Of a DNA stretch of 64,000 nt, positions 20,562 through 59,396 are shown in pieces. The stretch is taken from assembly GCA_002269645.1 (NCBI GenBank), contig NIVC01003635.1, positions 22,634-86,633 on the forward strand, given 5' to 3'. A model generated the notes under the pieces. The model was not told the DNA's origin. It did no database searches and saw only the letters and a program-made list of their open reading frames with translations. Position 1 is the first letter of the stretch. Each line of letters starts with the position of its first letter. The translations under genes were made by a program, and so were the position numbers. This stretch comes from Macrostomum lignano (taxonomy: Eukaryota).

Positions 20562-21407
20562 CTGGATTAGACAGAGGGTGGTTACACTGTAGTATGGCCT
20601 TGGATGGGACTCTTGGCTTTGGAATTCCCATGGAAAAACCGTCACTGTACTCAGTCCAATGCGCAATGCCATTTCTGGCAAAAAAATTTTTCGGATAATC
20701 AGTAACGATATCTGTTAAAGGGATTCTAAAATCCAAGACGGAGGGAGGGTTCAAGAGGGAGCAATAGATGCAATGGAATCGAAGGGAATGCCAAAAACGG
20801 GGTTTACAAAAATTCACTGGCGCATTTCCACTGCCAGGATCAACTGCCAAACCTAACTCTAACCCTAACTATAAAATCTAACCTAACCCTATCCTTAACC
20901 TAAATCTAATATAACCTTAACCTAACCTTAAACTAAATCTAACCTTAACCTAAACCTAACCTTAAACTAAATCTAACCTTAACCTAAACCTAACTTAACC
21001 CTAACCTAAACCCTATCATAAAGATTTAATTCCTAATCTAAATCGACGTCAGTCAATTTTCGTTCTTTCTCCACAAAGCTATAGTTAAATGGAATCCAAA
21101 CGGATTGGGAATCCAGAGGAAATTAAACTGAATCCAAAGGGAATTCTGAAAAATGCACATCGTACTTAAAGAACAATTCCTAATACTCACCTGAGTCAAA
21201 CGACTCTCAGCCTCTGGCGAGCCCATTTCGGAAATACTGCGCACAAAATTGTCAATAAAATTATCAACAGAATCGCCGGAATTTGTTACTACCGAGGAAG
21301 GAGTAGCCGCTGTTGGAACTTGCTGAGCAGTTGCAGACAATTGAGAAGATAAGAACGTTTGAGACGGCTGAATAGGTTGAGGCTGCTGCTGCTGTTGTTG
21401 ATGTTGC

Positions 21408-21444
<37 letters not shown>

Positions 21445-27400: not shown

Positions 27401-30400
27401 TCCCTATCCAACAGTTACAGAGCCCTTATCTAAAAGTTACAGAGCCCTTACCAACAGTTACAGAGTCCCTTACCAACAGTTACAGAGTCCCTATCCAACA
27501 GTTACAGAGCCCTTATCTAACAGGCATAAATACCTTATGTAACAGTTAGAGAGCCCTTATCCAATAGGTGTAAAGACCTTATCTAACAGTTACAGAGTCC
27601 TTATCCAAAAGTTACAAAGCCCTTATTTAAAAGTTAAAGAGCCCTTATCTAACAGTTAAAGAGCCCTTATCTAACAGGCATAAATACCTTATCTAACAGT
27701 TACAGAGTCCTTATCTAAAAGTTACAGAGACCTTACCAACAGTTACAGAGCCCTTATCTAACAGGCATAAATACCTTATCCAACAGTTACAGAGCCCTTA
27801 TCTAACAGGTGCAAAGACCTTATCTAAAAGTTACTGAGGCCTTATCTAACAGTTACAGAGCCTTTATCTAGCAGATGCAAAGCAAAGCCAAATATAAAAA
27901 GCAACAAAAGTGTCCATCGCACACCAACCTGCAGAGTCTTGCCCAGTCCCATACTGTGCGCCAGTATACAACCAAATCCTGGCGTACTATTAAACAATTG
28001 CAAATTCTCCACAACATTATCGTATAGGAAACGAACTCCGCCAATTTGATGCGGCCTAATAGCCTTGGCTATCCGGCTTGGCAAATAGATGTCGCTATCG
28101 TCCTGCGGATGACTGACATTCACCAGTACGCGACCAGATACATCTGGCACATTGTGCTCATCTTTAGCATGCTTGCCGTCAACATCAACGCCATCGTCTT
28201 CGTCTTCTTTATCGGCGGCGGCGTCGGAGTCTTCATTGCCGGCATCCTCATTATCGTCGCTGTCAATCACGATAGTCTCCTGTTGCTGCTGCAGCGGCGA
28301 AGACACGCCTCGGCCAGTGAGCAGCTGATTTAAACTGCTGTACTGCGGCACCCGATTGAGCAGGTTGCGACCGACAGAGAAATTCGACGAAGAATAATAG
28401 CCAGAAGACGATGAGGGAGCGGATGGTATTAAGAATTTGGCTGACGCGGACGTTGGCGAAGATGTCTTGGATCGTTTCGCTGGAGGCGGTTCCACGATGC
28501 AACAGGCGTCGTCGTCTTCTTCGTCATCACGATCCTCATCCTCATCATTCGTCTTATCGGCTTTCGAGCCTGTAGTAGAAGTTTCAGCGGCTGCTGCTGC
28601 TTTTGCTGCTAAGCGATCTTCTTTAGTTTCAAGCAGAGTTTCTAAGGTGGACGCCTTGGCGGCTGCGGCGGAGGCGGAGGCCTGCTGCTGCTTCTCTTGG
28701 ATTCGCTTTCTACGCTCCATCTCGGCTTTTTGAGCTTCGAGTGTCGCTTTGTCAACTTTTGTGTCGCGTATTCGACGAATATTGCGACGCTCGAATAGAG
28801 TCTTGGATCGCTTGGTGGGACTGTCTTCGGATGTCGGGGCAGCCGCCGCCGAAGATGCCGGGGTCTGCTGGCGCTGGCGTCTGCGATGGCGGGTGGGTGA
28901 CAGGTGCGGCATGGAGCTTGCTGGGGATCTGGGAGAGGTAAAGAGTCATGGGGATCTGGGAGAGGTGAAGAGTCATGGGGATCTGGGAGAGGTGAAGAGT
29001 CATGGGGATCTGGGAGTGTAGCGCCATGGGGATCTGGGAGAGGTGAAGAGTCATGGGGATCTGGGAGAGGTGAAGAGTCATGGGGATCTGGGAGAGGTGA
29101 AGAGTCATGGGAATCTGGGTGTGTAGCGCCATGGGATCTGGGAGAGGTGGAGTCATGGGGATCTGGGAGAGGTGAAGAGTCATGGGGATCTGGGAAGAGT
29201 CATGGGGATCTGGGAGACGTGAGAAATGTGAGATGTGAGAAATCGACTATTTTGTGCAACCAGCATTTTGTATTTCATCACTTACTTTGCCTCTTTTGCT
29301 GCAGCTTTGATCAATTCGTTCTGATCCACACCTGGCGGCAGCAGATCCTCGGCCGATTTACCTGCATTGTCATCCTCATCACAGTCTTCTTCTGTAGAAT
29401 CTTCGTCGTCGTCGTCGTCGTTGAAATCTTCGTCGAATTCTGCAGTTCCATGTTCAGCCGGACTGTCTTCGACTCCGGCTTCAGAGAAGAAGAAATCGGT
29501 GGGGTCGCACTCGTCCGATACGAGGCAGTCCAGGCCCATGATTTCCGCCACGGCCGCTTCGGCAGCTGCTTCCACAGCGTCACCGTTTGCGGCGGACTGC
29601 GCTTGATCTAATTGATAAAGAAAGATAATAGTAGCAACAGCATGGGGATGGGAGAGTGGAGACGGCGCAGCAACTGAGGATCTGTGAGGCTGGCCCAGCA
29701 ACTGACACTCTGGGAGGCTGGCCCAGCAACTGAGGATCTGGGAGGCTGGTCCAGCAACTGAGGATTTAGGAAGCTGGCCCAGCAACTGAGGATCTGGGAG
29801 GCTGGCACAGCAACTGAGGATCTGGGAGGCTGGCCCAGCAACTGACACTCTGGGAGGCTGGCCTAGCAACTGACACTCTGGGAGGCTAGCCCAGTAACTA
29901 AGGATCTGGGAGGCTGGGCCAGCAACTGAGGATTTAGGAGGCTGGCCCAGCAATTGACACTCTAGGAGAGGCTAGCACAGCAACTGACACTCTGGGAGGC
30001 TGGCCCAGCATCTGACACTCTGGGAGGCTGGCCCAGCAACTGAGGATCTGGGAGGCTGGCCCTGCAACTGGGGATCTGGGAGGCTGGCCCTGCAACTGGG
30101 GATCTGGGAGGCTGGCCCAGCAACTGACACTCTGGGAGGCTGGCCCAGCAACTGACACTCTGGGAGGCTGGCCCAGCAACTGACACTCTGGGAGGCTGGT
30201 CCAGCAACTGACACTCTGGGAGGCTGGCCCTGCAACTGACACTCTGGGAGGCTGGCCCAGCAACTGACACTCTGGGAGGCTGGCCCAGCAACTGCGGATC
30301 TTGAAGCGTCTGAGGATCTGGAGCAAATAAAGTTAAAGACCCAAATTTCATAGTCTAAACCAAGTGCACGTTCGCAGGGGCATTGCAAAAAAGTTTTATA

Positions 30401-35514: not shown

Positions 35515-38500
35515 CATGTATGAGTGGCGGTCAGGCCGGTGCACGACTGAGAGCGGGGCCCGCCTGTACACCCAGGCCCCCTGCAGCTGTTGCAGGGGAG
35601 TTTTTCCACAGCCAACCAGTTTAATCTGACTCAAACCCTCCTTCTCGTTAAGTATAAATAACTATGGTTAACAATAATTATACACAAGGTCTCTTTGCTC
35701 GCTTGCTACACTACATGTAGCTGCCACTCGCAAGCCGCTATACATTGTGAGCCCTATACGCAGCCATTTCGTGCAAAGGCCCCACAAACCGACTCTGCTG
35801 TGTCCCAGCTGAAACTGCCCACGTTTTGGGCGGTCCAGCCTCGAGCATGGTTCACCCAGGCCGAAGATCAGTTCACCCTGAGAGACAGCACTCAGGACGA
35901 AACAAAGGTACGCCCATCCAGTCGCAGCTCTTGACCAGCAGACAGCAGAGCGTCTGCTCGATGTGCTCGAGGCTCCTCCGGAGGCGAACAAGGTGCGCTA
36001 AGCTAAAGGAGCGCCGCAACAGCACTTTCGATTCAACTCCTCAGCAGCGAGCCAGCCTCCTGCTCAGCATGTCCGGCCTATGCGACCGGCGGCCTTCCGA
36101 GCTGATGGACGAGATGCTCGCCCTGCTCGAGAACGACCGCCCCTGCCTGCTGTTCGAGGAGCTGTTCCGCCAGGCGCCAGCAGCTGCCACCGGAGGTACG
36201 CATGGCCATGACAACCGGCAGTTTTGCGGACCCCCGGGGCAGCAGCGCAGCAGGCGGACAAGATCTGGGCCAGCCAGCCGAAGCTGGTCGCGGCCTCCGT
36301 CCAGCAGCCGGCGGCAGACCCAGCCCAGCAAGCCCAGCCGGCGGTCTCTGCGGCCAGCAAGGGCGCCAGACAGAGACGGCTCCAGCAACACCGCCCGGAC
36401 GGCAGCCTCACGGTGCCAGGACTTCGGCATCCGGCGCTGCTCCTGGCCGTTTAATCTGGCCGAGGTCTCCGCCCGCTGATCGGCGACGACTTTCTTACGG
36501 CACCAAGGCCTGCTGGTGGACCTGTCGCACCAGCGCCTCCTGGACGCCCGCTCGCTCGCCAGCGTGCACCTGCTGGACGGCGCGGGGCCCAGACTGCAGC
36601 TCGCCGCAGCCGCCGCTGCGGACCCGTACAGCCAGCTGCTTGCCGAGTTCCCCGCCCTCACCGAGCCCAGTTTCCAGCGGGCTGATCCAGCCAACGACGA
36701 CATGGGGTGGAGCATCACATCCCGACGCAGGGCCCGCCGGTCCACGCCCGCCCTCGCCGCCTGCCGCTGCAGCTGGCGGTGGCCAAGGAGGAGTGCCGGC
36801 TCCTGGAGCAGCTCGGCATCGAGCGCCGGTCCAACAGCCCTTGGTCCTCGCCGTTGCACATGGTTGCATCCGGCGGCTGGCGGCCCTGCGGCGATTTCAG
36901 GCGGCTCATCGACGCCACGGTGCCCCGCTACTCGCGGTGCCGCACATCCAGGACTTCTCAGCGCGCCTGGCCGGCTGCTTGGACTTCTCCAAGATCGATT
37001 TCGTGCGTGGCTACCACCAGGTGCCTGTGGCCGTAGTTGACGTGCCCAAGACCGCTGTCACCACCTCGTTCGGCCTCCTCGAGGTCCTGCGAATGCCGTT
37101 CGGCCTTAAAAACGTCAACCAGGCCTTCCAGACTTCGTTTTCGCCTACATCAACGACTTCTTGGTCGCTAGCCGCAGCCCGCAGCAGCACATGGTCCTCG
37201 CCGTCACATGGTGCACCTGCGGACGCTGTTCCAGCGCCTGGCCGAGAACGGCCTTATCGTCAACCCGGCCAAGTGCGAGTTCGGCCGCAGCGAGATCGAC
37301 TTCCTCGGCCACCGGATCAGCGCCCAGGGGGCCGTGCCGCTGCCCGCCAAAGTCGACGCCATCGCCATGTTCGCACCACCAGCCACCGTCAAGAGCCGCC
37401 GGCATGGTGAATTTCTACCACCGCTTCGTGCCGCGCGCCGCCCAGCTGCTGCGCCCCATCCATGCGGCCATGGCCGGCAAAGAGAAGTTCGTCCGGTGGA
37501 CGCCCAAGCTGACCGCCGCTTTCGACGGAGCGAAGCGGGCGCTGGCCTCCGCCGCCATGCTGGCGCACCCGCGGCCATACGACGCCTCCGATACCGCAGT
37601 CGGCGCGGCGCTCGAGCAGCGGGTTGGTAGCCTTGTTCGCCCTGTACCTGGCGGTCCGGCACTTTCACTATTTTCTCGAGGGCCGCGCGTTTACCGCTTT
37701 CACGGACCACAAGCCGCTGGTCGCCGCTATGTCCAAGACGTCTGACCCGTTGTCCGCCAGACAGCAGCGCCACCTGGCCTACGTGTCCGAGTTCACCACG
37801 GACATCCAGCACGTGGCGGGCAAGGATAACTCGGTCGCAGACGCGCTGTCCCGCTGCACGGTCTCTTCGGTGCAGCCCCGGCTGCTCCCCGGCGTGGATT
37901 TCGGGGCAATGGCGCAGGCGCAGGCCAGTCAGGCCGACGCCAGCCTCCAACTTGAGCCGCTGCAGCTCAGCCCCGGTGTCGCCCTGCGTTGCGACATCTC
38001 CACGGGCCGGCCGCGCCCGTTGGTGCCGCCGAATTTCCGACGCTCCGTTTTTGACGCTTCCACGGTCTCGCCCACCTGTCCGTCCGCAGCACGAGGCGCC
38101 TCGTGGCCGCCAAGTTCGTGTGGGCCGGCATGAGCAAGGACGTCAGCCGTTTGGCTCGGTCCAGTGTCGCCTCCGCTGGCCAAGGTGCACCGGCACGTCG
38201 CCGCCCCGGTTGGCAACATCCGCGTTCCGGACCAGCGCTTCGCCCATGTGCACGTCGACCTGGTGGGGCTGCTGTCACCTTCGCAAGGCTTCACGCACCT
38301 GCTGACCATCGTGGACCGTTTCACCTGGTGGCCGGAGGCTATCCCGATGACCGACACCTCCGCGGCCGCGTGCGCCTCCGCCTTCATCGCCGATTGGATC
38401 GCCAGGTTCGGCGTGCCGAGCGATATCACATCGGATCGCGGCTCGCAGTTCACGTCGCAGCTGTGGTCCAACGTCTTACGACTCCTCGAAATGCAGCTCC

Positions 38501-39060
38501 ACCGGACAACGGCTTTCCATCCGCAGGCGAACAGGCTGATCGAACGATTCCACCGGCAGCTGAAGGCCTCCCTCATGGCGCGACTGGCCGCATCAGCCTG
38601 GGTCAGCGAGCTGCCCTGGGTGCTGCTCGGCATCCGGACGGCCCCCAAGGAGAACCTGCCGGCATCGTCGGCCGAGATGGTCTACGGTGCGCCCCTCTGC
38701 GTGCCCGGCGAGTGCCTGCAGCCCAGCCCGCCGCCCGTCGACCACGACCAGTTTCTCGCCCGGCTCCGCGGTGCCGTCCAGGCATTCCGGCCAACGCCGA
38801 CGTCCCGTCACAGCAGCCGCCCCACCTCCTGGTCCGCCGCCCTCGACGCCTGCCAGTTCATCTTCATCCGGCGCGATGGCCGCCGCCCCCCGCTGCAGCG
38901 ACCTTACGACGGCCCGTTCAAGGTCCTCGAGCGGGACACCAAAGCTTTAATTCCTGCTGGATTTGGGCACTCGCCGCGACTGGGTGTCAGTGGAGAGGCT
39001 GAAGCCAGCCGTCATCGACGCGAACGACCCTGTCCCGACGCCGGCTCTGCGACCGAGAGT
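35515..39060 (+). mobile_element. Decayed Ty3/Gypsy retrotransposon (gag-PR-RT-RH-IN), 3'-truncated
   Basis: Gag LKLPTFWAVQPRAWFTQAEDQF; RT SPWSSPLHMV, RPCGDFRRL, RMPFGLKN; RH FTDHKPL, GKDNSVADALSR; IN VHVDLVG, IVDRFT, ITSDRGSQF, PYDGPF; many frameshifts; 5' LTR boundary uncertain. Confidence 0.9.
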
Positions 39061-39419
39061 ATTGGGAAAATATAGTGTATTTTTGTGTATTGATTATTAT
39101 TTAATTACTAGTTGGAATAAACTTAGGTATGTATTTTTACAATTGATTATTACTTTTCTACCGTATGATTCCAGGAATTCGTTTCGTATTTAAACCGCGG
39201 GTAGAATTCAATTTTGTACTTCTTTTTTCCCGTCGTTTCGCGCCGCCTCCTGATTGGTCCAAGTCGTATTTCTATTAGTCAGTCATAATATTTATTCCTT
39301 TAGTTCAACCAATTTAGATATATAGAATATCAAAGTATCAAATCGTTAAATAAAAATAAATATACTCGTAAATAATTGGCCGTCTGAACGTGAACTAATA
39401 AACCGCTACACCAAAGCTT

Positions 39420-39600
39420 TTTGCATATATGGTAGACTTGTGCAGTGTATGGTTTTGTAGGTAGACAAAGATAAATTTTTCACGAGTGGCGAAGCCACGA
39501 GAGTGACTGAAATTAATCATTGACAAAACCATATATCCACAAGCACATTGTCTCATGAATGTATTTTTAGTGGCTTTGAATAACATATGGTTTTGAAACG
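39420..39600. mobile_element. Possible non-autonomous Crypton-type terminal fragment
   Basis: CACGAGTGGCGAAGCCACGAGAGTG (39481-39505) matches in reverse complement the hairpin core at 47070-47093; flanking TATGG/CCATA motifs. Confidence 0.45.
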
Positions 39601-40359
39601 TTGAATATGAGCGTACAGTATACTACACATGTATGTATTTTTTCAAAGACCTATAATTTCACATCATACATATACTTCTCAGCTAGCTAACCACAGATAC
39701 TATAAACACTAGATAGGCCACTCAGGCTAATTTTCTGGGCAAGTTTTTTATTCTACTTTCTGCTTAGTAGCAATGAAAGGAAGCAACAGTATTATTTGCT
39801 AAATTAGACAAATCAAGTGACTGTTTTTGAGACATCGTTTTGCTAACGCCATAAACAACTAACTTGTTTTGTGCAGTAATGGTGTACATTAAGACGCGAC
39901 AGACAGTGTACAATGCCGCTATCTTTCAAAGTGGAGGAAGGGGGGTAGTCTGGAATAGGGTTAATATCAGTTTCGTATAAGGAAGGGTGAGTGGATCGAT
40001 AATTTAGGCCCACTGGTGGTGGGATAGAAAATAAAGGACTGCAAATAGCTAGCCTGGGTTAGGGGTGGGGGTTTAGAGGTTGTGGGTTAGAAAATTTGGG
40101 GTGGCGAATCGTGCTTAAATACAAGCTTATATATAGATGAACAGGACAAGATTCAGAGTTAAAGAAAGTTCGAGTGCATACTAGCTTTTCTATCTAATCT
40201 CGTACTCGAGAAATGTTTTGATTCGAACCACTGCTGTGCTCCCACTTGCACGAGCTCTGTACTAGTGCTATTAACATCCGAGAAAGAAAATCCGTTGCGA
40301 ATGCATAAATTACCAAAAGATGACACTGGCAAAGCGCTGGCAGCAGCTACTGCAGGAGC

Positions 40360-41200: not shown

Positions 41201-41843
41201 AGATGAGAAATCTTTCTATTTTGCTACACGAATATGGATTATGGAGTATATGATATAGCTCGTATTTGCTAAATATACAATAGTTGACTGCAATAATATA
41301 GCCTTCAATGCAATCTAAAGCATTCACAACGTTGCTTTGAATTGTAGAAAGTATAATTATAAGTTTCTTTTTGCAAATAAAATCAATATAATTGCTGCAT
41401 TGCATTCATCTGTTTTTTATTTAAAAAAAATATAAATAACGCTAAAATGTTTTTACTACTACTAAGCAGAAAGTAGAGTAAACTGTCGTGTTGTGAAAAT
41501 TAGCTGGAGTGGCCTATCTAGTGTTTATAGTATCTGTGTAGCTAACTGCCCAAAATATTTTAATTTCATGGTTGCTCTGCAGACCCCTTTTGGCCATAGA
41601 CAATGAAAATAAAAGTCTTCAACAGCTTGATTCTCACACCCTAGGGGTTAAACCGCTTGCTCCTTGGGCTCAATTTGGTTTGGAAAGTGCATGCAAATGC
41701 AATATTTGTTACAATTTATTGATCTATCGTCCTTTTCTACAGAAGATTCCGTGGAAAATATGTTATACTCGTAGTTTCACTGGTCTGGAATTGACACTTC
41801 GATAACAATTTCTTCACAGATTATTATTTTGCAAATTCGGAAA

Positions 41844-44278: not shown

Positions 44279-44565
44279 AACTACCAAGAGGGGGGGGGGT
44301 AATTCCCCACCCCTGACATTTTTTTGCTGCGCCGTATTGGAGCAACGCAGGCACACGAAATTCAAGAACACGCGCCAAATTTTTATTGCGCACCTTCTCA
44401 AACAAGAAGGTCGGATTTTTCCCATAAGCGCCAGTGTATTCAGTACACCCCTGTGCGCCAATCAGCACTGCTGGATATTCTCAGCTAGTATCTCAAGCAT
44501 TCCGTCATCACCCCGACGCCTCGGTACCTTCAAGAAGACAAAAACAGGTCTATGGACACCCAAAG
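44279..44565. repeat. Inverted, internally deleted copy of 50087-50602
   Basis: Three blocks match the reverse complement of about 50473-50602, 50362-50424 and 50087-50158. Confidence 0.85.
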
Positions 44566-45285
44566 AGATGGTTTTTTATTTGCTATCAATTTTAGTTACA
44601 TTAGTTTTACTTGATCTTGAGTGCATACAAAAAAATGGATACTCTTTGTAATTTTTTGTCTCAGCGAAAATTCGGTTTAATTTCCGGTTCAATTAACTAA
44701 TTACGTCATCACGTTTACGTCATTACGTCAGTGTAGTGCTCGTAGTCCGCTTGGCGGGTAAGAGTCTTGGCCTCTAAGAGCCGTATATTTGCGATATATA
44801 TTCACGCAGCTGCCGACGTGCAGCTATGAGTTACGCAATACATTGGCTACGTTGTATTGCGTAAAAGTGTATTGCACGTTGGCTAGAGAGCAAGAGAAAG
44901 GGCATTGCCCAAAATTTCTCCTCATGGCAATGACCCATGGCAATGGCCGGCCATTGCCTAGAATTCCAATTCCAATGCAACCAATTAATTCAAGCCAGTT
45001 TTTATCCAGCATCTTGCAAAGCATATTTTGCATCAGTCAATTCAAAACGTTTATTTTAAGATGTAAATAATTAAACTGGCACAGGAATTGCAAAATCGAC
45101 AGTACAAAAAGCACAGCTGGTGTCAGTATATCATGTAAATTTTTGTCGGTGATGAACATCATACTGGTCGAGCAAAGTACTAAAAGTCATTAAATAAAAA
45201 ATATTAAACTAGACTGTCGTTCTTATTCTTTCAGTAATTCTACGAGTACAATTTGCTGATTCCTGTAGAAGTAAAGATTGCATGC

Positions 45286-45616
45286 CTAATTAAAGGAACA
45301 TCCGTGAAAGGTGCAATTGTTGAAGGCAAACTTCGTACCAACAGAATAGGCAGCTTCAGTGCTAACACTAACCTCCGTCGATACTGCAGTCTCACCGACA
45401 ATCTCAACAGCATCAGCATGTTCGGGTGGCCCAGCTTCTTGCTCTAGATCATGACGATTCAACGCCACCTGAACAGACTCACTCGTCTTTTGAAGCGACC
45501 GGTCGCGACGCTTGGCTAGGTACCTCCTAGTCGTTCGCTCGCTCAGCTGTCCAGTAATGCTCATTATATCGCTCATGCTGTGCCCTGCCGCCTCGAGATC
45601 GCATATTCGCGTGACC
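45286..45616 (-). CDS. Crypton-type tyrosine recombinase exon 2
   Basis: CTAAAACAG|G GTC; VTRICDLEAAGHSMSDIMSITGQLSERTTRRYL, ending FAFNNCTFHGCSFN. Confidence 0.85.
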
Positions 45617-45720
45617 CTGTTTTAGAGTGCAAATTTATATAGTTGGATTCATGAGTAACTGGTAACATAACATGTATCATAACATAATTAAAGTTACTAT
45701 TATTAATTTATCAGTCTTAC

Positions 45721-46775
45721 CGAATGCAATGATTCGTGTAGGTCTTCGCAAGTCCCGCCTTCGTACTCAAGTTTCTCATGAAGCCACTCAGATAATTCTC
45801 TCCACGGTTCTGCTTCGAGGAGAAAACAGGGCCTCCATCGTTGCGGCTGGCCAAAGGACGAGGAAACAGATTGTTGTCCTTCGTTGTAACTGGAAGCAGC
45901 TTGAGGTATTTCTCCACCTTTTCCACGTCGTAAATTCTGGCCTGCTTGTTGTCCGGCTGCTTCTTGGCCTTCTCTGGATCTGCTGACTTATTTTTCGAGG
46001 GCAACGGAGGCAGACAGTAGTACGGCTTTCCATCAGAGTCGACGTGCAATTGAAGTGAGCTTCTATCCTTCAAGAACTTGAGGTGCTCCTGGCCTCGCTC
46101 GCCAAAGCTGTATATGATGTAGAATAAGAATTTGTCCTGCTCAACTTCAGCTGTGCTGCCTTGGAAGTAGATCATCAGCTTCCTCATGTCCCCCTCCTCG
46201 ATTGGCTCAAACTGCTGCGTCCTCCCACCACTCTGGTGAAAGTCTCGAACCTTCACACGCAGCATGCTATTTGCAGAAGAAAAGTCTTCTCCATTGATGA
46301 TGTCAACGGTTAGCTTCTCGATCATTCGCAAATAGCGCTGCAGTCCAGCCCTGATGCACACCAGCGATGCGGGCGAGTAGGGTTCGCCGTCAATCTTCTT
46401 CAGTTTAAAGTAGAAGTAGCGAATGTATTGGTTGAGCACCGAATTCGGAATGGTTTGTAAATTGCGCTGAAGATTTTCCTCTGTGAGGAATGTCTTGAAC
46501 CGCTGTCCATGGCTGATCATCTGCTTCCTGCTGTCTGCTGGTAGGCTGTCAATCTCGGCGATGTCCATGGCGCTGATATCTACGCTGCCTTCCTGCAGGA
46601 GCGGCAGATGCTCATCGGGCTCGGGCTCCTTTTGAATGAATTCGAGAAATCTAGCGAACTCGTCGTCCCTTCTGTCATTGTAAGAAGCCTCCGAAACAAA
46701 ATTCAATTCGTCCTTAGTCACGTTGCCCAGCTCACTGCAGGGCAAATGCTTCCAATTAATGAGCGGTGCCTCCAT
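45721..46775 (-). CDS. Crypton-type (DUF3504-like) tyrosine recombinase exon 1; 461 aa spliced from first ATG
   Basis: YSPASLVCIRAGLQRYL, FGERGQEHL (R), SKNK (K), YTNHCIR (HxxR); donor CG|GTAAGA; frame open upstream to GTG at 46823. Confidence 0.88.
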
Positions 46776-47031
46776 CTCTGCAGCCGTCCGCTTTTCTCTA
46801 TCTGAGATTTGATCTCTAGACACGCAAATATTTATATTTGTAATTAATTTAGGGGTGGGTGCAGAGTAAGGGGTGGGTGACTTCAGATGCGCGACTTAAA
46901 GGTGAGACATAGGCGAGGTGGAGGTAACCTTATCTCAAACCCCCTTAGAAGCATCGACTGATAAGAATTCACGATAGTGTACATAAAGTGCGTAGATTAC
47001 GTAAGAGTTTTGAAATTTTAAGCAATGATGC

Positions 47032-47129
47032 TCATCGGAAGTCAGAGTTTAAGGCAATGGCCTAATTGACACTCGCGGCTACCGCCGCTCGTGTCAAAGG
47101 CCATTGCCTTAAACTCTGACTTCCGATGA
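47032..47129. other. 98-bp hairpin with 32-bp perfect outer arms
   Basis: TCATCGGAAGTCAGAGTTTAAGGCAATGGCCT ... AGGCCATTGCCTTAAACTCTGACTTCCGATGA; inner TTGACAC/GTGTCAA and GCGGC/GCCGC stems. Confidence 0.95.
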
Positions 47130-47364
47130 ACCCTCCATTGTACACGCATAGGCTGCGCACCACATCTCTCCCCCAAAGCAAAAGAAAAGTCCAATACGAG
47201 AGGGTTTAAAATCTCATTGCGAAAATTGGACGAGAAACGATGTGAAGGATAAAAAAAATTAATTAGTAAAACAGTGGCAAAATTTTTTATTTTCGACCGA
47301 TTAAATACTTAAACAATTAAAGCATGCCGATCTTTGACAGCGTTCCCGCTCAGTTCGAATCAAG

Positions 47365-49975
47365 TCACTGCTTGTAGCAGACGGGCTGCTTTGCTGTCCT
47401 GGGATGAGGCCTCTGTGCAATCGGACCGTCGTTGGCCGAATTTGCCTCCGTCGCAGGCGCCCCCGGTCGCTGATCGCCGTCCAGCTCGTCAAGGTCCCAG
47501 GGGCACTCACGCAACGGCTTCGTCTCGGTCACATGCCGCCGAACGACTGCCGTGCCGCGTTGCAGAGTCAGGGCGCCGCCGCTGACTGCCTTGACAAGCC
47601 AAGGCCGCGGGTCGAACGGACAGCGCAGCTTGGCCTTGCCGCGGTTTCTGAGCAGCACGCGGGCGCCTGCCAGGATGCCGTGTGGCGCGGCCGATCGCCG
47701 CGTGTCGGCCGCCTTGCGCATCGCCTTCTTGTAGCCGCGGTCGTGGAGCTGCAGCTGCCGTCCGGAGCTGCCGGTTTGCTTTGTCAGGTTGGATGGCAGG
47801 ATGTCGCCGGTCTCTCGGTTGAACATGAGGTCGTTGGGCGTGCGGTCGGTGCCTCGGTGCACAGAATTGCGGTATCCAAGCAGCCAATCGTGGATCGCCC
47901 GCCGCCAGTCCTTGCCTTCGGCCGTGACGGCGTTGATGGCCTTGTTGAGGCTGCGGTTGAAGCGCTCCACCTCGCCGTTCGCCGCCGGGTAGAGCGGGGT
48001 GACCCTGCGCTGTCGAACCCCGAGGCCGTCCAGAAACACGCTGAATTCCTCGCTCGTGAAGTAGGTGGCGTTGTCCGTAGTAATCTGCTGCGGCACCCCG
48101 AAGCGGCTGAATGAGGCCATGACGCAGTTGATGACGCTGGCGCTGGTGAGGCTTCGCACCACGTAGAGGTCCGGGTAGCGGCTGAAGTAGTCCACCAAGA
48201 CCACTACGTTCTAGCCCGTTGGAAATGGTCCGCACACGTCGACGCTGAGCGATTGCCAGGCCCCCGACGGAAGCGGAGTCGGCTGCATCGGCGGGTGTTT
48301 CACGGCGCCGTCGGTCCGGGCCGCTTGGCACGGGAGGCAGTTAGTGACGACCGCCTCGACCTGCTTGGACATGCCGGGCCACCAGACCTTACGCTGCAGT
48401 CGGTCGCACGTCTTCTTCTGTCCGAGGTGGCCCTGGTGCGCTAAACCGATCGCAAGCTGCTGAAGCTCCGCCGGGATCACGATTCTGTTTCCCCGGAGCA
48501 GAAGGCCTGCGTGGACGCTCAGTTCGTCTTTGAGGGACCGAAAACTGTGCGCAGGGCTCGCCGCGCCGCAGCTCCAGTTTCCTGTTTCCAAGGCGCGCAT
48601 GACGACCACCAGAGCTGGGTCTCTCTCGGTCGCAGCCCGGATCCTGTCGACGGTCAGGCCCTTTGGGGTGGCCGCTTGGACAACGGCGTCGCACAGTCTG
48701 GTGTCCTCAGCCTCGTCTTTGTGTGACGATGCGCTTGTCAGCGGATTGCGGCTCAGCGGGTCTGCCGGGTTGTCCTCGCCTTTGCGGTAGTGCAGTGTGA
48801 ACGTGAAGTGCTGGGTCTGCAGCATGATACGCTCGAGCCGGGGCGGCGGCCTTGAGTCTGCTCTGTAGATCCCAAGCAGCGGCTTGTGGTCGGTGTAGAT
48901 ATCGAAGTGCGGGCAGCCCTCCAGGTAAAACGCGAACTTCAAGCAGCCGAACTTGACGCCCAGGGCCTCGCGCTCGATCTGGCTGTAGCGCCGTTCGACG
49001 TCACTGAGCGTGCGGCTCGCGTAGGCCACCGGCCGCGTCTGCCCGCTTGGGTGTCGCTGCTGCAGAATGGCACCGACGCCGACGGGTGACGCATCGACCA
49101 CCAGCTCGGTCGGCAGCCGCTTGTCGAAGAAGGCCAGCGTGCAGCCCTCGGAGATGCAGTCCTTGACGGCCTGAAAGGCCTGCTGCTGCTCGCGGTCCCA
49201 GACGAATTCCTGGCCTTTCCGTGTTAGTCGCCTCAGCGGCTCCGCTTTGTCGGCCAGGTGCGGCATGAACTTCTCGAGGTGATTGGCCAGGCCGAGAAAC
49301 GACCGGAATTCCTTGGCAGACTGTGGATCCTTGAATGCTTATAGCTCTGCGATTTTCTCTTCTGATGGCTGGATGCCGAACTTGGAGAGCGTCATAGCCA
49401 TGAACTTGGCCTTGCCGATGCCCCAGCGGCACTTGCTGGCATTCAGGGTGATGCCATTGTCGCGCAGTCTGCTCAGGCAGGCTGCCACGTGTTCCTGGAG
49501 AACTTCAGGGCCCTGACTGTGGATGATGATGTCGTCGTGGATCCACTTGACACCAGTGAGGCCTTCCAGCACTTGCTGCATGACGCGCTGCAGGATCTCC
49601 GAGGCGGAGGCGAATCCCATGCTCAGGCGTGTCAGCTGACGCATCCCTCGGGGCGTTGAGAAGACGAAGTACTTTCAGCTGTCCTCACTGATCTCGATTT
49701 GGTGAAATGCCTTGAAAATATCGAGCTTGGTGAAGATTGTCGACCCCGTCATGTCGCTGGTAGCTTCTTCAAAAGTCGGGATTTGGTGTCGCTGCCTCAG
49801 GGCCGCCTTGTTAACGTCTCGCAAATCCTGGGTGATCCTCACGGTCTTCCCGTCCTCTTTCGGTACCACGACGATGCGACTGACCCATGGCGTGGGGCCT
49901 TCTACTGGCTGGATGATCTGCAGGCGCTCTTGCTCGTCCAGCTCGCGGTCCAGCGATCGCGGTGTTGATAGGCTG
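47365..49975 (-). mobile_element. Ty3/Gypsy pol (RT-RH-IN) with few stops, 5'-truncated
   Basis: TPWVSRIVVVPK, KLDIFKAFHQ, WIHDDIII, VVDASPVG, YSQIERE, YTDHKPL, GEDNPADPLSR, AHQGHLG, VDYFSRYP, TTDNA, NGEVERFNR; possible short 3' LTR 47139-47339. Confidence 0.92.
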
Positions 49976-52046
49976 TTTGAGAGTCTAGCTGAGAATGACC
50001 AGGAGTTAAAGTTTGCCCATTATTGAAGCTTGATAAGAAAAATCTGACATAGTTGCAACAGGATCTTCATAGTCACCTGGTGCCACCTGTTGAAGGAGCC
50101 GACGGCATCGGGGTGATGACGGAATGCTTGAGATACTAGCTGAGAATATCCAGCAGTTGAGGCTTGCCCACTGTCGAGACTTGATCGGCGAAACTAGAGA
50201 AATTCGCATCAGGGTGTCCATAGTCACCTTGTGCCACCTGTTGAGGGTCCAGAAACTCCGCTTGGGTGAAGGCTAGTGACCAACGAAGTCAGAGCTGATG
50301 CAGACACATGTGATCGACGTGCTGATGAAATTGGAGGCTTGGCAAGGCTGCACTGAGGCGCAGTGCTGATTGGCGCACAGGGGTGTACTGAATACACTGG
50401 CGCTTATGGGAAAAATCCAACCTTCTGGCAGAATCGTCAAATATCTCGACGGTCTGGAGGGCTGGCGACTTGATTCTTGTTTGAGAAGGTGCGCAACAAA
50501 AATTTGGCGCGTGTTCTTGAATTTCGTGTGCCTGCGTTGCTCCAATACGGCGCAGCAAAAAAAATTGTCAGGGGGGATTTTTTCCCCTTCCTCTTGGTAG
50601 TTTGACGGGCGGAAAGATGGCTTGATATTCCTACCTGTTAATCCGTCCAACCCTCGCACCGCTCCCTCCACTTCATTCCTCAACTCAAGTCTGCCGCGGC
50701 GTAGTTGAGTTGCGTCACTCGCAAAGATTGAGAGACTTTACCTGCCCTCTCAAAAGTGGCAATCGCAGACAGAATCACAGCAGGTTGCACACAGCGGCCA
50801 CATTCAAGCATTTCGTCGAGGTCTTTGGACGACCTTCTTCTCTAATTGGTTCGTACGTCGGTCCAATGGAAATGGCTTCATCATGAAGTACATACAGTCT
50901 ATCTCAGCAGTGGCTTTGTTGGCGCTGCATGGAGCCTCAATGGGAATGGGAATCAATTTTGCTGAACACATGCTTTATGAGCTGTATAAATATGTTGTAT
51001 ATTATTTGTGAAAAGAAATTTCAAAGCTGCAATTACATGTAGAAGTGCTTTTCGATGAACTTTGGAAACACAATATAATCTGGAATATTGTACAAATGAA
51101 CAGTAGAGTAAAAGAAGTTTGACAGTTATTAAAGGTAATTAGTCGTTGGATCCTAAGACTGAAAAACAAATATGGCCTGGAATTTCTGATAGCTTGATCT
51201 GTTGATTTCTTTAGAGACACTGGTGCACTACTGTATGTGTTTAACAATAATGTATACTATACGCCTTCACTCTTTTGAATTGGAAAGGTGATGCCTTCCA
51301 TAGTTGAGGCAGCAAAGATCGTCAGTAATTTAATGATGAAGCAGCAGCTGCAACTAAGGAGGATGCACCTACCTTCAACATATTCATCATTGATATATAG
51401 CTTACTATAGTACTATTTGGTGGCATACAACTGACACAGTAGTGATTGCCTATAAAAGAGACTTTGTGTCGAAATCACTATAGCTATTCTGCAGTAGCAG
51501 AGAAATTGGAAAACTGATGCTTCTCTTGGCCCTCGATTTTAGCTTTTGTGTGCCAGCAAGAAGGATTATTCGAATTCAAAGTAGAGCCATGCATTTATAT
51601 AAGCTTAAAACTAGGCAGCATTGTCGACTTTCAGTGTCAATGCACTGCAAGGATTGACATGGTAAGCTTCAAAGCAATTGCCTCGTTTATCTTGATGATT
51701 TTATTGTACAGCAGGGGTTGGCAAACTTTTTTACAAACAAAGCAAGACAAACAATCCAGCTCATTGGCTGCGGATTTGATGAAAGTGGAAACGAGACAGA
51801 ATGGAAGACGAGACATGAGAGAAGAGAAGAGAGGCAAGAGATGGGATGAGAGAAAAGATAGAAAATAAGATGAAGGAAGAGCGGAAAGAGGAGAATGAGG
51901 AGAGAGAGAACAGAGGGGGAGAGGGAGCGCAAGGAGAGAAAAGAGAGGGGAGAGAAGAGGGGAGAGAGGGGTGAGAATTAAAAAGAGGGGAGAGAGGGGG
52001 CAGAGGGGGAGAGAGGAGAGGGGGAAGAGGGGGAAAAGGGAAACGG

Positions 52047-57187: not shown

Positions 57188-59396
57188 TGTAACCACGCTC
57201 TGGTCGCGGGATAGGGCATGGGAACTTTTTCGAAAGTGCCTCCTATCCCGTGCACCCTCTGCACAGAGCTGTCGAGACTCGGCCAGGTCTCCGACCGGGC
57301 CTGGAGACTCCCGCTCTGCTGCACCCCTCCTGCTGCCTTGGTCCCGTCTCTCCTGCCGCCACACCTGCCTTTCCGGAGCCCCCTACCCCTTTCTGTACCT
57401 CCCCCTCTACCCTATCTCTTCTGTTCCGCCCTATTCTTCCTGTACTTTCCCTTTCCCCCCTCTTTTTATCTCTCTCTGCACTTTTTTTCCTGCGCTGTCC
57501 CCTCCTTCTCTGTGTCTACTTACAGTATTTTGTGTGCTCACCGTCTCCCCATCCCCTCCCAAACTCCCAAACGGTGACGCAAGTCGTGTGACCCCTTCTT
57601 CCCCCCGATGACTCATCGATGACTCATCCCCCTCTCTTGCGCAACCTTTTCTCATGCTATTGTTCTCCTCCCCAAATTTCTCATGCGACAACCACCCCAC
57701 CTCCGCTTCTATTGTTCTCGTTTTTACTTCTTTTGTTCTCTCGACCCCCACCAATTATCACATTTTCTCCGATTTTCTCTTTCTTTTGTTCTCGTTTTCG
57801 CACCTAATTATCACCTTTTCTCCAATGTTTACTTTTCCATTGTTCTCAGTTTTCCCCAATTATCCCCGATTTCCAATTCCTTTGTTCTCGACCCCAGCCC
57901 TATTGTTCTCAATGTTTGCTTGCGCAACACTTTCGCGACCACCCGCTGCGCCAATTATCCCCCACCCCACCTCCGGATTGCGCAATTTCCCGATTTCTCA
58001 TGTTGCTATGCCGGTCTCATGCTTCTCATCATGACTCATTCTGACGTCATTCTGCCGGCAGCCAATCAGAGAGAGGGAGCCATGGTAACGACCTTGAGGA
58101 GGCGGCTGTGAGGTCTATAAAAGGAAGCGATTTCGGCATGAGAATACTCAACTGAGTTTATCTCTGTTCCTCTCCTCGTCCTTCTTTGGACTTGCTGTCA
58201 GATTGAGTTCTGACCCATTCGTCTATAAGACGAATCCCTGCCGGTCCGCGGTCTGTTACCGCCAAGTTATCCTTAGCTCCCCAAGTGAGCTCGCCTATCG
58301 GCCAGCGGTCTGATACCGCCCAGCATCATCAGCATCGCCTGATCTACATCAGCGCCTCGTCGCTCCAGCGCATCGCCGCTTCACCGTCTGCCTGACTGCA
58401 GCCTACAGCCGCCCTCGGTCACTCCGCCTCTCTCTCTCTCTGTGCAGCTGCCGGTAAGTTCCTACTACTAATTTGTGCTCTAATTGCCTTTGCTTATCCG
58501 GGGTTTGCCTATTTTCCATTGTCTGATTAGAGAGCTGAGCCAATTGTGATACCGTATCTTTTGCTGTATTTTACTCAATAGTGAAGCCGCCTAATTGCCT
58601 GCTTATTTGCCTAAGGGCCTAATTATTAACTATTAACTAACTTCATCATTATTCAATCTTTCACCATCATTTCACTCATGGCTTGCTAAGCCTTTCTCCC
58701 GGGGTGGCAAAGCATAAGGAAGTTTGGGTAAGCTAATGGCCTCTCCCCGTGCAAAGCCCGCCTGTGAGTGCGTGCTGCGGGGCCGCGTGTGCGTGCAGTA
58801 GAGGGATTAGCGAGTCTTGGCACAGAATGGCAGTAGGAAGGTTGCAACCCCATGCTAACGCGTCCCTTCGCCCTGAGCAATCTAAACTGTAGACAGTACA
58901 TGTTCGCCTCATACTACTCTTAGTAATCAAAGTCGCAAGTCAGCCTCGCTCACAGCCACAAAGGATCCCCTGCTGAGAAATCCTCCAGGATTGAGCCCAG
59001 AGTTCCCGATCATGCCCCAAGCAGAGTCCCTGTACTCGGCTGCATGCGTCTCCCCTGTTAGCCTAAATCCCCTGGTAACCAATCCAGGCGGGGCTCTAGC
59101 CTCGAGAGGTCTGGTAGAAAGATCCAGGTGCGCCAGGTCACATAGAGTGGTGGCAGCCACTCGGTCATACCATGACCGAGTGACCAACTATTGCACCTTG
59201 GCTACAGGTGGGGTCCATGTGGGTCCTTGGCCCTCTGGTCACGAAGCGCTACCAAAGCTACTAATCATGTGGGCGGGACAGTCTGGTGCTGGAGGTCCGT
59301 CAGGTCATTGCCCGGTCATAGGCAGCCTACGGTCATTGCCCCCTCTAGCCATGCGTTCGTCTCTCTACGGGCGGACAGGCGACAAGGGCGGTTACA
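57188..59396 (+). mobile_element. Long (about 2.2 kb) 5' LTR of a Gypsy-type element
   Basis: TGTAACC...GGTTACA inverted termini, internal CCAAT/TATA, PBS immediately downstream. Confidence 0.75.
57609..58122 (+). promoter_or_regulatory. LTR promoter: 3 x TGACTCA, TGACGTCA, CCAAT, TATAAAA
   Basis: TGACTCA at 57609, 57620 and 58032; TGACGTCA 58042; CCAAT 58062; TATAAAA 58116. Confidence 0.6.

What the first reader, a model, noticed from the sequence alone, without database searches (positions are those of the whole stretch)
44880..47130. Near-intact, intron-containing Crypton-type tyrosine recombinase with matching palindromic sites on both flanks
Seen: a 104-bp GT-AG intron (45617-45720) splits the HxxR motif; splicing restores a 461-aa ORF with R (GERG), K (SKNK), HxxR (NHCIR) and Y (RRYL), while the second His position reads TGQ (CAG, one base from His). 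Downstream lies the perfect palindrome GGCAATGGCC-GGCCATTGCC (44939-44958) with more partial copies; upstream the same decamer pair sits in a 98-bp hairpin (47053-47062 and 47099-47108). Established: Cryptons are YR DNA transposons without TIR/TSD, and domesticated derivatives (ZMYM, KCTD1, KIAA1958, QRICH1 types) generally lose catalytic residues. Inference: a possibly active eukaryotic site-specific recombination system with its binding sites visible, of interest as a genome-editing recombinase.
Basis: partly seen in the sequence, partly recalled or inferred. Interest (0 to 1): 0.8.

Follow-up and report, generated by a model that had tools for sequence, protein, structure and literature searches.

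The report
Intact Crypton transposon with palindromic ends
This is a complete ~2.2-kb Crypton-type mobile element in an animal genome: one intron-containing gene for a Cre-like tyrosine recombinase, bounded by a conserved 118-bp DNA palindrome and short CAATG repeats that look like its recombination sites, an end structure I could not find described for animal Cryptons.

Summary
The gene lies on the minus strand. Removing a 104-bp GT-AG intron gives a 461-aa protein with a Cre-like two-domain fold. It keeps R227, E230, K261, H349, R352 and Y384, and has Gln375 where most relatives have His. That Gln is shared by the whole clade whose named members are all from the flatworm Macrostomum lignano, so it is not a recent lesion.

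Distant relatives on many short contigs are about 2-kb units, 100% identical, that diverge sharply at both ends. They carry 5-6-bp terminal direct repeats, and one contig shows a head-to-tail junction. All share one architecture:
- YAATR core, then a ~100-bp hairpin, then the inverted core plus IR-L, then the gene, then IR-R plus a core.

The window copy fits this exactly:
- 5' CAATG at 47140-47136.
- Palindrome at 47140-47023.
- IR-L at 47027-47012 and IR-R at 44918-44903.

They lie inside the element, not in its flanks.

Verdict: an intact autonomous Crypton of the DUF3504/CryptonA lineage. Its conserved terminal palindrome is not described in the Crypton papers I read. Activity, and copy number in the source genome, were not tested.

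The parts
44903..47140 (-). Predicted whole element: 2238 bp including both CAATG cores, or 2233 bp as a circle
   Evidence: The ends are placed by analogy with relatives whose ends are visible. Window-specific matches support them.
47136..47140 (-). 5' terminal core / direct repeat CAATG (outer site 1)
   Evidence: It pairs with CATTG 47027-47023 in the fold. It occupies the same position (+1) as TAATG, CAATG or ACAATA at the 5' junctions of L002, L009, L013 and L021.
47023..47140 (-). 118-bp 5'-terminal palindrome running from CAATG to CATTG, with perfect 32-nt arms at 47098-47129 and 47032-47063
   Evidence: -55.5 kcal/mol, z = -17.9. Homologous hairpins lie at the same place in L002, L013, L009a, L009b, L019, L021, L022 and L008.
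47070..47093 (-). Hairpin centre CAC-GA-GCGGC-GGTA-GCCGC-GA-GTG: a GC stem, a 4-nt loop, and GA/GA mismatch positions on both sides
   Evidence: The centre is conserved across the family with compensatory stem changes.
47099..47108 (-). Inner site 2: decamer GGCAATGGCC, with CAATG at +35
   Evidence: The equivalent YAATG lies at +35 to +37 in L002, L009a and L013.
47053..47062 (-). Inner site 2': decamer GGCCATTGCC, with CATTG at +82
47012..47027 (-). Outer site 1' (CATTG) plus IR-L: CATTGCTTAAAATTTC
   Evidence: It is an inverted copy of 44918-44903 (14 of 16 positions). With this 16-mer held fixed, only 3 of 20000 shuffles of the downstream 500 nt match as well, and it is the only match of 14/16 or better in the whole 64 kb.
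46829..46836 (-). TATAAATA, a candidate TATA box 54-61 nt before the ATG
   Evidence: Read directly from the sequence. This is inference only.
45721..46775 (-). Exon 1: residues 1-351 plus two bases of the Arg352 codon
   Evidence: Homologs start at the same MxxLINW motif.
45617..45720 (-). 104-bp GT-AG intron, phase 2, in the Arg codon of HxxR
   Evidence: L001 has an intron at the same position and phase (98 bp). L006 has a GT donor at the same codon, and its exon-2 peptide continues downstream; its acceptor was not mapped. Intron GC is 25% against 50% in the exons.
45286..45616 (-). Exon 2: the third base of the Arg352 codon, residues 353-461 (including Gln375, Tyr384 and the C-terminal FNNCTFHGCSFN motif) and the stop codon
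45050..45055 (-). AATAAA, a candidate poly(A) signal
   Evidence: L001 has the same AAATAAACGTTTT context after its stop codon. This is inference.
44923..44958 (-). 3' subterminal site cluster: the 20-bp palindrome GGCAATGGCC|GGCCATTGCC (44939-44958) and two tandem 13-mers (44923-44935, 44936-44948)
   Evidence: repeat families D2 and D11. L001 has the matching GTTAATGACC..GGTCATTAAC pair. L002 has two tandem CATTA units at the same distance from its 3' end.
44903..44918 (-). IR-R plus the 3' terminal core: GAAATTTTGGGCAATG
   Evidence: The terminal GGGCAATGCCC is a one-mismatch copy of the decamer.

Best explanation
The region is one intact, autonomous Crypton-type DNA transposon of the DUF3504/QRICH1-related (CryptonA-like) lineage. 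It spans about 44903-47140 on the minus strand.

Shown:
- It carries a single RNA polymerase II-type gene whose spliced product is a 461-aa, two-domain, Cre-like tyrosine recombinase. R227, E230, K261, H349, R352 and Y384 are present, and Gln375 sits at the position that is His in most relatives.
- The element starts with a 118-bp palindrome. The palindrome holds four YAATR cores in a fixed geometry (+1, +35, +82, +114) around a conserved GC stem-loop.
- Directly inside the palindrome lies a 16-nt inverted copy (IR-L) of the 3' terminus (IR-R).
- The 3' subterminal region repeats the same decamer-type sites.

Inferred mechanism:
- The recombinase binds the CAATG-containing sites.
- It recombines the two directly repeated terminal CAATG cores and releases a 2233-bp circle. 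In that circle, IR-R, CAATG, the hairpin, CATTG and IR-L form a roughly 150-bp palindrome.
- The circle re-integrates at a short CAATG-like target. Targets often lie in or beside another element's hairpin.
- The role of the palindrome is not known. It may be a symmetric assembly platform or an extruded cruciform.
For: Protein:
- catalytic residues are conserved, Foldseek gives Cre at E about 1e-8 and TM (target-normalised) 0.61-0.67, and the relatives match Pfam Phage_integrase, QRICH1 and DUF3504.
- The family is large: 5447 clusters at E <= 1e-3.

Mobility of the family:
- P0010 contigs from six samples share a 1997-bp block at 99.9-100% identity and then diverge. ACAATA lies on both sides.
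- L017 joins the 3' end to the 5' end through a single ACAATA.
- P0011 contigs share about 1931 bp ending in ...GACAATG. They continue either into unrelated DNA or directly into a second, different family member.
- L021 has CAATA at both ends.
- M. lignano has at least 11 gene models in 4 clusters. Some are fused to different host genes.

Architecture:
- IR-L and IR-R match at 16 of 16 positions in L002, L013, L009 and L007 (0 of 300 shuffles).
- The pairs are 20 nt in L021, 47 nt in L022 and 16 nt in L008.
- Nine hairpins share one centre. On the hand-built alignment 98% of cells pair, and 7 of 12 pairs change on both sides (0 of 500 shuffles).

Window copy:
- Searches show the same geometry as M. 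lignano L002 (cores at 1/35/82/114 against 1/36/81/114).
- The IR match has p about 1.5e-4 with the 16-mer held fixed.
- The ORF is intact and the hairpin arms are perfect.
- The decamer co-varies with that of the closest relative L001.
- The element sits in a repeat-rich stretch, next to a truncated LTR-retrotransposon pol.
Against: - There is no second coding copy in the 64-kb window. Copy number in the source genome is unknown, and neither an empty site nor a circle junction could be looked for.
- The window's ends are placed by analogy. Its IR is 14 of 16, not perfect.
- The relatives with directly visible sharp ends are only 30-36% identical and carry His, not Gln, at the second His position.
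- For the Gln clade the evidence for mobility is indirect: several M. lignano loci and conserved end structures.
- The head-to-tail junction rests on one Logan contig. A tandem array would give the same contig.
- Gln375 may lower or abolish catalysis.
Confidence: 0.8

Rival explanations
1. The element is structurally intact but immobile. It is a Crypton as described, but the His-to-Gln change at residue 375 (or something else) has abolished catalysis in this clade, so the copies are young relics or depend on another enzyme.
For: Gln replaces His in only 10 of about 115 aligned family representatives. Directly visible sharp-ended multi-copy units were seen only for His-type relatives. There is no second copy in the window.
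Against: The Gln is kept across proteins that are only 43-66% identical, while every other catalytic residue and the full end architecture stay intact. Relics would not be expected to hold these. M. lignano carries several loci. From my own knowledge, not tested here, Cre has Trp at this position, so His is not obligatory.
Confidence: 0.25
2. It is a domesticated host gene. On this reading a Crypton-derived recombinase-like protein is kept by the host as a DNA-binding regulator, and the palindromes are its conserved regulatory elements.
For: An intron is conserved at the same codon in WIN and L001, with a donor at that codon in L006. The Gln is clade-wide. The amino-acid divergence is measurable (dN about 0.32 to L001) but dS is saturated, so no dN/dS ratio could be obtained. 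Domestication of DUF3504 genes is well documented (PMC3212892).
Against: - R, E, K, H, R and Y are all retained, unlike in the domesticated genes (PMC3212892, PMC13465315).
- No host domains are fused to the protein.
- The gene is bracketed by direct-repeat cores and inverted repeats in the same layout as relatives that are demonstrably multi-copy with sharp ends.
- M. lignano copies lie beside different genes.
- The window holds a second, decayed hairpin of the same type at 39.4 kb.
Confidence: 0.08
3. The upstream hairpin is an unrelated foldback element, MITE or microRNA-like locus that happens to lie beside the gene, and the decamer matches are coincidental.
For: There is a weak Rfam match to a microRNA precursor (RF04144, 29 bits against a gathering score of 100, E = 0.0067). 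Long hairpins are common in repeat-rich DNA.
Against: A hairpin with the same centre lies at the same distance upstream of the gene in nine elements that are 29-66% identical in protein, including M. lignano. All four exact decamer matches in 64 kb lie at the two sites. The decamer co-varies between the hairpin and the 3' region in WIN and L001.
Confidence: 0.02

Closest known systems
Animal Cryptons (CryptonA) and the DUF3504 lineage (Kojima & Jurka 2011, PMC3212892; Glomhopper, PMC13465315)
   Same: The element is YR-only. The R-H-R-Y tetrad is retained. The relatives match Pfam DUF3504, QRICH1 and Phage_integrase. It is about 2 kb, lives in animals, and sits in repeat-rich DNA.
   Different: The 2011 paper reports no terminal repeats and no C-terminal domain for animal Cryptons. 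The 2026 paper could not define the ends. Here the family shows 5-6-bp terminal direct repeats, 16-47-nt IR-L/IR-R pairs, a conserved ~100-118-bp terminal palindrome and a conserved C-terminal CxFxxCxF motif. Placement against Repbase CryptonA consensus sequences was not tested.
Fungal and oomycete Cryptons (CryptonF/S; the Goodwin et al. circle model as cited in PMC3212892)
   Same: Both have 4-6-bp terminal direct repeats taken to be recombination substrates, and a proposed excised circle that integrates at a short matching target. The head-to-tail junction in L017 fits this model.
   Different: Those elements have a GCR1_C or other C-terminal domain, and no terminal palindrome is described for them. 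The proteins are only distantly related.
Cre/loxP and other simple tyrosine recombinase systems
   Same: The predicted two-domain fold is closest to Cre. Binding motifs are inverted around short cores. The 20-bp palindrome GGCAATG-GCCGGC-CATTGCC looks lox-like.
   Different: Sequence identity is 12-16%. There are four cores in a 118-bp palindrome plus subterminal repeats, rather than one 34-bp site. The element transposes to short targets instead of recombining two fixed sites. The His/Trp position holds Gln.
Folded-DNA substrates of tyrosine recombinases: integron attC with IntI, and CTX phage attP with XerCD (recalled from my own knowledge)
   Same: Two inverted core sites are separated by about 100 nt that can fold into a long imperfect hairpin. 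Non-palindromic positions are conserved, here the GA/GA mismatches.
   Different: There is no evidence here for a single-stranded stage. This is an analogy only. IntI4 (2a3v) is a weaker structural match than Cre.

Membership tests
Crypton (YR-only DNA transposon) | Encodes a tyrosine recombinase and no reverse transcriptase or other transposase | tested here: met
   There is a single 461-aa Cre-like ORF between the predicted ends. The neighbouring rve/RNase H ORFs belong to a separate LTR-retrotransposon fragment beyond 47365.
Crypton (YR-only DNA transposon) | Catalytic R-H-R-Y tetrad intact | tested here: met
   R227, H349, R352 and Y384 align with the columns that are conserved across the family and with HxxR...Y of XerA. 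The auxiliary His position holds Gln375.
Crypton (YR-only DNA transposon) | Short (4-6 bp) direct repeats at both termini, with no LTRs | tested here: met
   Relatives show this directly: ACAATA (P0010 element), (A/T)(C/A)AATG (P0011 element), CAATA (L021) and TAATG/TAAT (L002). In the window, CAATG lies at 47140-47136 and 44907-44903, but those ends are inferred by analogy.
Crypton (YR-only DNA transposon) | Several copies with different flanks in one genome (mobility) | not testable with these tools
   The source genome is not available, and the window holds only one coding copy. For relatives the feature is met: identical units with different flanks and several M. lignano loci.
Crypton (YR-only DNA transposon) | Excised circular intermediate | tested here: inconclusive
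   One contig (L017) joins the 3' end to the 5' end through a single ACAATA. This could be a circle or a tandem array. Nothing is available for the window element itself.
CryptonA / DUF3504 lineage | Similarity to the DUF3504 and QRICH1-type domains | tested here: inconclusive
   The window protein hits QRICH1 at E = 1.2e-4 (22.5 bits, below the 30.8 cut-off) and does not hit DUF3504. Among 20 family members, 14 hit QRICH1, 10 hit DUF3504 and 16 hit Phage_integrase.
CryptonA / DUF3504 lineage | Groups with Repbase CryptonA consensus sequences in a phylogeny | not tested
Domesticated DUF3504 genes (ZMYM2/3/4, QRICH1, KIAA1958, KCTD1, WOC) | Catalytic residues lost, fusion to host domains, and single-copy syntenic orthologs | tested here: not met
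   The catalytic residues are retained. There are no extra domains. Transposon-type ends are present. Synteny could not be tested.
DIRS/Ngaro YR retrotransposons | A tyrosine recombinase together with RT/RNase H, plus split or inverted long repeats | tested here: not met
   There is no RT inside the unit. The adjacent pol fragment carries an rve integrase, so it is a classical LTR element, and it lies outside the predicted 5' end.

The most novel reading that the evidence does not exclude
The conserved terminal palindrome is recombined as folded DNA. Its features are four YAATR cores at fixed spacing, a co-varying GC stem-loop, and conserved GA/GA mismatch positions that are non-palindromic in duplex form. 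On this reading the Crypton recombinase acts on an extruded cruciform or hairpin, as IntI does on attC or XerCD on CTX phage attP. That would be a eukaryotic tyrosine recombinase that reads DNA shape. It would also explain why elements insert into each other's hairpins.
Probability: 0.15. Interest if true: 0.85.

Novelty: new variant of a known kind. Interest (0 to 1): 0.62.

Why it matters
The ends and recombination sites of animal Cryptons have been an open gap. Kojima & Jurka 2011 found no terminal repeats, and the 2026 Glomhopper study could not define boundaries.

A family-wide architecture with exact junctions gives a concrete, testable substrate for a compact Cre-like eukaryotic recombinase of about 460 aa. 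The architecture is a short core direct repeat, a 100-118-bp palindrome holding four cores, and the IR-L/IR-R pair.

This would help in three ways:
- Cryptons could be annotated properly.
- The circle-excision model could be tested.
- The many lineage-specific site variants would be a natural library of orthogonal recombinase/site pairs.

If the copy turns out to be inactive, it remains a useful reference copy of a little-described transposon family.

Tried and rejected
- Second copy in the window: tblastn, blastn and a six-frame hmmsearch with the family profile found no other coding copy.
- Using the neighbouring LTR retrotransposon to fix the insertion point: no matching LTR or continuation turned up in the window.
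- Metagenome scans: alignment A1 was too divergent for pattern design. Alignment A2 gave only one extra locus, L007.
- Flanks of L003, L004, L005 and L006: too short to show the ends, and the IR tests were not significant. In L004, a 10-mer GTCTATGGTA occurs in both flanks and ACCATAGTCTATGGT forms a palindrome after the stop. These were seen by eye and the L004 flank tests were not significant, so I count them as suggestive only.
- GGAAGTCAG shared by the WIN and L001 arms: judged likely chance, because the orientation differs.
- dN/dS: dS is saturated, both WIN against L001 and WIN against L002.
- Rfam: only a sub-threshold microRNA-like hit on the hairpin.
- A partner IR-R for the second hairpin at 39.4 kb: none found.
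- Identifying the organism from the RAD54L2/ARIP4 gene: the best hits are about 50% identical across many metazoans, so the species stays unknown.
- An ungapped centre-extension hairpin finder I wrote missed the hairpins because of internal loops. The repeat finder replaced it.
- A first pure-Python IR scan timed out and was redone with numpy.
Full report
**1. Checking the observation**

The gene is on the minus strand. The ATG is at 46775 and exon 1 runs to 45721. A 104-bp intron (45720-45617, GTAAGA...AACAG) interrupts the Arg codon of NHCIR in phase 2. Exon 2 runs to the stop at 45288-45286. Splicing gives exactly 461 aa, and without splicing the frame stops right after HCIR. The intron is 25% GC and the exons are 50% GC.

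The decamer GGCAATGGCC has four exact matches in 64 kb, counting both strands, all at the two reported sites. One-mismatch copies lie at 44900-44909 and 44926-44935. The upstream hairpin has perfect 32-nt arms. As single-stranded DNA, 47140-47023 folds at -55.5 kcal/mol, z = -17.9.

**2. The protein**

Pfam gives only weak hits for the window protein itself: QRICH1 domain at E = 1.2e-4 and Phage_integrase at E = 0.027. Of 20 aligned family members, 16 hit Phage_integrase, 14 hit QRICH1 and 10 hit DUF3504. A family profile finds XerA (5hxy, E = 1.5e-4) and aligns HxxR, GH and Y.

An AlphaFold2 model (mean pLDDT 74.7, mostly around 90 in the core between about residues 80 and 380) is closest to Cre-DNA complexes. 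It matches across both domains, with about 335 aligned columns, E about 1e-8 and target-normalised TM 0.61-0.67.

In an alignment of about 150 representatives, R227, K261, H349, R352 and Y384 fall in strongly conserved columns. E230 is invariant in the 20-member alignment. The second His position is His in 104 sequences and Gln in 10.

The family is large: 5447 clusters at 50% identity with E <= 1e-3, and 260 with E <= 1e-30.

**3. The Gln and the intron are lineage features, not lesions**

The nearest proteins are unnamed contigs at 66% identity (P0001, P0002) and Macrostomum lignano proteins at 44-54%. The window protein and P0003-P0008 carry TGQ in the alignment, and spliced L001 reads ITGQ. 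More distant relatives carry (S/T)GH.

L001 has a 98-bp GT-AG intron at the same codon and phase. L006 (P0009, 38-40% identical, His-type) has a GT donor at the same codon, and its exon-2 peptide continues downstream; I did not map its acceptor. The M. lignano copy L002 and the contig L004 lack this intron.

**4. The family is mobile and has sharp ends**

Protein P0010 lies on contigs from six different samples. They share a 1997-bp block at 99.9-100% identity and then diverge completely. The block is preceded by ACAATA and ends in ...GTCATAGATAGACAATA. Contig L017 runs from the 3' end straight into the 5' end through a single ACAATA, which indicates a circle or a head-to-tail array.

P0011 contigs share about 1931 bp ending in ...GATAGACAATG. 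They are preceded by ACAATG or ATAATG. They are followed either by unrelated DNA or directly by the hairpin and N-terminus of a different family member. L021 has CAATA at both ends.

In L016 and L020, other hairpins abut the junctions, so elements appear to insert into or beside each other's hairpins.

M. lignano has at least 11 gene models in four 90% clusters. Some are fused by gene prediction to different host genes, including neprilysin and PIPK.

**5. A common architecture, and how the window fits it**

In every member with enough flank, the order is:
- a YAATR core;
- a hairpin of about 100 bp;
- a few nucleotides;
- the inverted core followed by IR-L;
- about 250-300 bp, then the gene;
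- IR-R ending in the core.

IR-L and IR-R match at 16 of 16 positions in L002, L013, L009 and L007 (0 of 300 shuffles each). The pairs are 20, 47 and 16 nt long in L021, L022 and L008.

The cores sit at +1, +35, +82 and +114 in the window. They sit at 1/36/81/114 in M. lignano L002, at 2/37/80/113 in L009a, and at 8/43/86/119 in L013.

In the window:
- CAATG 47140-47136 pairs with CATTG 47027-47023.
- IR-L (47027-47012, CATTGCTTAAAATTTC) matches IR-R (44918-44903, GAAATTTTGGGCAATG) at 14 of 16 positions.
- With the 16-mer held fixed, only 3 of 20000 shuffles of the downstream 500 nt do as well. It is the only match of 14/16 or better anywhere in the 64 kb.

The predicted element is therefore 44903-47140, or 2233 bp as a circle. 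A TATAAATA box (46836-46829) and an AATAAA signal (45055-45050) lie inside the ends.

**6. The hairpin is conserved by symmetry, with conserved asymmetric positions**

Nine hairpins share a centre of the form outer stem, GA, G plus a 4-6-bp GC stem, a GTTA/GGTA/GAA/GTA loop, the complementary stem, GA, outer stem. The centres include:
- window: CAC GA GCGGC GGTA GCCGC GA GTG
- M. lignano: CAC GA GTGGC GAA GCCAC GA GTG
- P0010 element: GA GGCTGC GTTA GCAGCC GA

On a hand-padded alignment, 98% of cells form Watson-Crick pairs. Seven of 12 pairs change on both sides. No shuffle out of 500 reaches the observed score, and slid controls drop to 36-51% pairing. The alignment was built with the structure in mind, so these counts lean toward the structure. 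They show that dyad symmetry is preserved while the sequence changes. They do not show that a hairpin forms.

The GA...GA positions are not palindromic in duplex DNA, and eight of the nine hairpins keep them. In a folded strand they would lie opposite each other as tandem G-A mismatches. That reading is inference.

**7.

The two upstream decamers are the inner cores of the palindrome (+35 and +82). The downstream 20-bp palindrome and the two tandem 13-mers (GGYCATTGCCATG) lie 21-55 nt inside the 3' terminus. The terminal site GGGCAATGCCC is itself a one-mismatch decamer.

In the closest relative, L001, the motif is GGYCATTAAC in both the hairpin half that the contig retains and the 3' palindrome. 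The motif therefore changes in concert at both ends, as expected for sites read by the element's own protein. L002 has two tandem CATTA units at the same distance from its 3' end as the window's tandem CATTG units.

**8. Context**

The window comes from a metazoan. It contains an RAD54L2/ARIP4-type SNF2 helicase gene at 19.6-29 kb, with best hits of about 50% identity across many animals, so the species cannot be named.

The element lies beside a truncated LTR-retrotransposon pol (RNase H, integrase zinc finger and rve domains, 47365-49266, minus strand). Another pol fragment lies at 36-39 kb.

A second, decayed hairpin lies at 39.42-39.55 kb. Its centre is identical to the M. lignano centre over 21 nt (CACGAGTGGCGAAGCCACGAG). 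It has no recombinase ORF and no IR-R partner. It looks like a remnant of another insertion of this family.

**9. Mechanism**

Shown: an intact Cre-like gene, terminal direct-repeat cores, the palindrome, and the IR pair. Sharp multi-copy ends and one head-to-tail junction are shown for relatives.

Inferred: the recombinase recombines the two CAATG cores and excises a circle. In the circle, IR-R, CAATG, the hairpin, CATTG and IR-L form a palindrome of about 150 bp. The circle integrates at a short CAATG-like target. This is the model proposed for fungal Cryptons, as summarised in PMC3212892.

The role of the palindrome is open. So is the catalytic competence of the Gln375 enzyme. From my own knowledge, Cre carries Trp at this position, so His is not mandatory.

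**10. Rivals**

- Intact but immobile because of Gln375: about 0.25. This is a sub-case of the main reading.
- Domesticated host gene with a regulatory palindrome: about 0.08. The retained catalytic residues, the transposon-type ends and the multi-locus relatives argue against it.
- Unrelated foldback element or microRNA-like hairpin: about 0.02. The positional conservation in nine elements contradicts it, and Rfam gives only 29 bits against a threshold of 100.

**11. Comparison with what is known, and novelty**

This is a Crypton of the DUF3504/QRICH1-related lineage, which is a known kind. Kojima & Jurka 2011 state that animal Cryptons showed no terminal repeats and no C-terminal domain. The 2026 Glomhopper paper could not define the ends. 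Two further full-text searches found no description of a Crypton terminal palindrome.

Within the literature I could reach, these features therefore appear to be new:
- the conserved palindrome with four cores;
- the IR-L/IR-R pair;
- the exact junctions;
- a conserved C-terminal CxFxxCxF motif.

I rate it a new variant of a known kind.

**12. Limits**

The ends in the window rest on analogy plus window-specific matches. Copy number, empty sites, circles, splicing and activity were not testable here. The unnamed contigs come from metagenomes or read sets of unknown organisms.

Noticed in passing
window 39419-39561 (+): A second, decayed hairpin of the same type. Its centre, CACGAGTGGCGAAGCCACGAG (39481-39501), is identical to the M. 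lignano L002 centre. CATTG lies at 39518 and 39546, and the arms are degenerate. There is no recombinase ORF nearby and no IR-R partner. It is probably the remnant of another Crypton insertion.
   Followed up: partly
window 39692-39778 and 41451-41538: A pair of long inverted repeats about 1.85 kb apart (44 nt at 95% and 32 nt at 88%). This looks like the TIRs of an unrelated DNA transposon, directly downstream of the decayed hairpin.
   Followed up: no
window 44279-44533 and 50090-50602: A repeat present twice in inverted orientation (74-94% identity). The two copies bracket the Crypton and the LTR-retrotransposon fragment. Its nature is unknown.
   Followed up: no
window 44831-44864: A perfect 12-nt inverted repeat, TTACGCAATACA / TGTATTGCGTAA, about 40 nt beyond the predicted 3' end. 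It contains CAAT cores. It may be a trace of an older element end used as the target.
   Followed up: no
window 44690-44740: Three closely spaced (T)GACGTAA motifs, resembling CRE/ATF sites, in the 3' flank.
   Followed up: no
window 19659-29000 (-): A host gene for an RAD54L2/ARIP4-type SNF2 helicase (SNF2-rel_dom and Helicase_C). Its best hits are about 50% identical across many metazoans, so the source species is not in the protein collection.
   Followed up: partly
window 36000-39100 (+) and 47365-49266 (-): Two GC-rich LTR-retrotransposon pol fragments (rve, RNase H, integrase zinc finger) of different families. The second ends about 225 bp from the Crypton 5' end.
   Followed up: partly
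window 59303-59340 (-): Two copies of GGCAATGACC 28 bp apart in GC-rich DNA. This is the variant of the decamer seen at 44926-44935. No hairpin or IR was seen there, so it may be chance.
   Followed up: partly
residues 450-461 of the protein (window 45289-45324): A C-terminal motif, FNNCTFHGCSFN (CxFxxCxF), is conserved at the extreme C-terminus across the family, for example as NCTFNF. The model predicts a small beta-hairpin there, after a disordered linker. It may be a protomer-contact peptide.
   Followed up: no
L009 1930-2482 and L011; L016 about 2045-2101; L020 131-250: Family members lie head-to-tail with different members, or directly against other hairpins. In L009, a second element starts right after ...GACAATG. 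This suggests that the cores in resident hairpins are preferred targets.
   Followed up: partly
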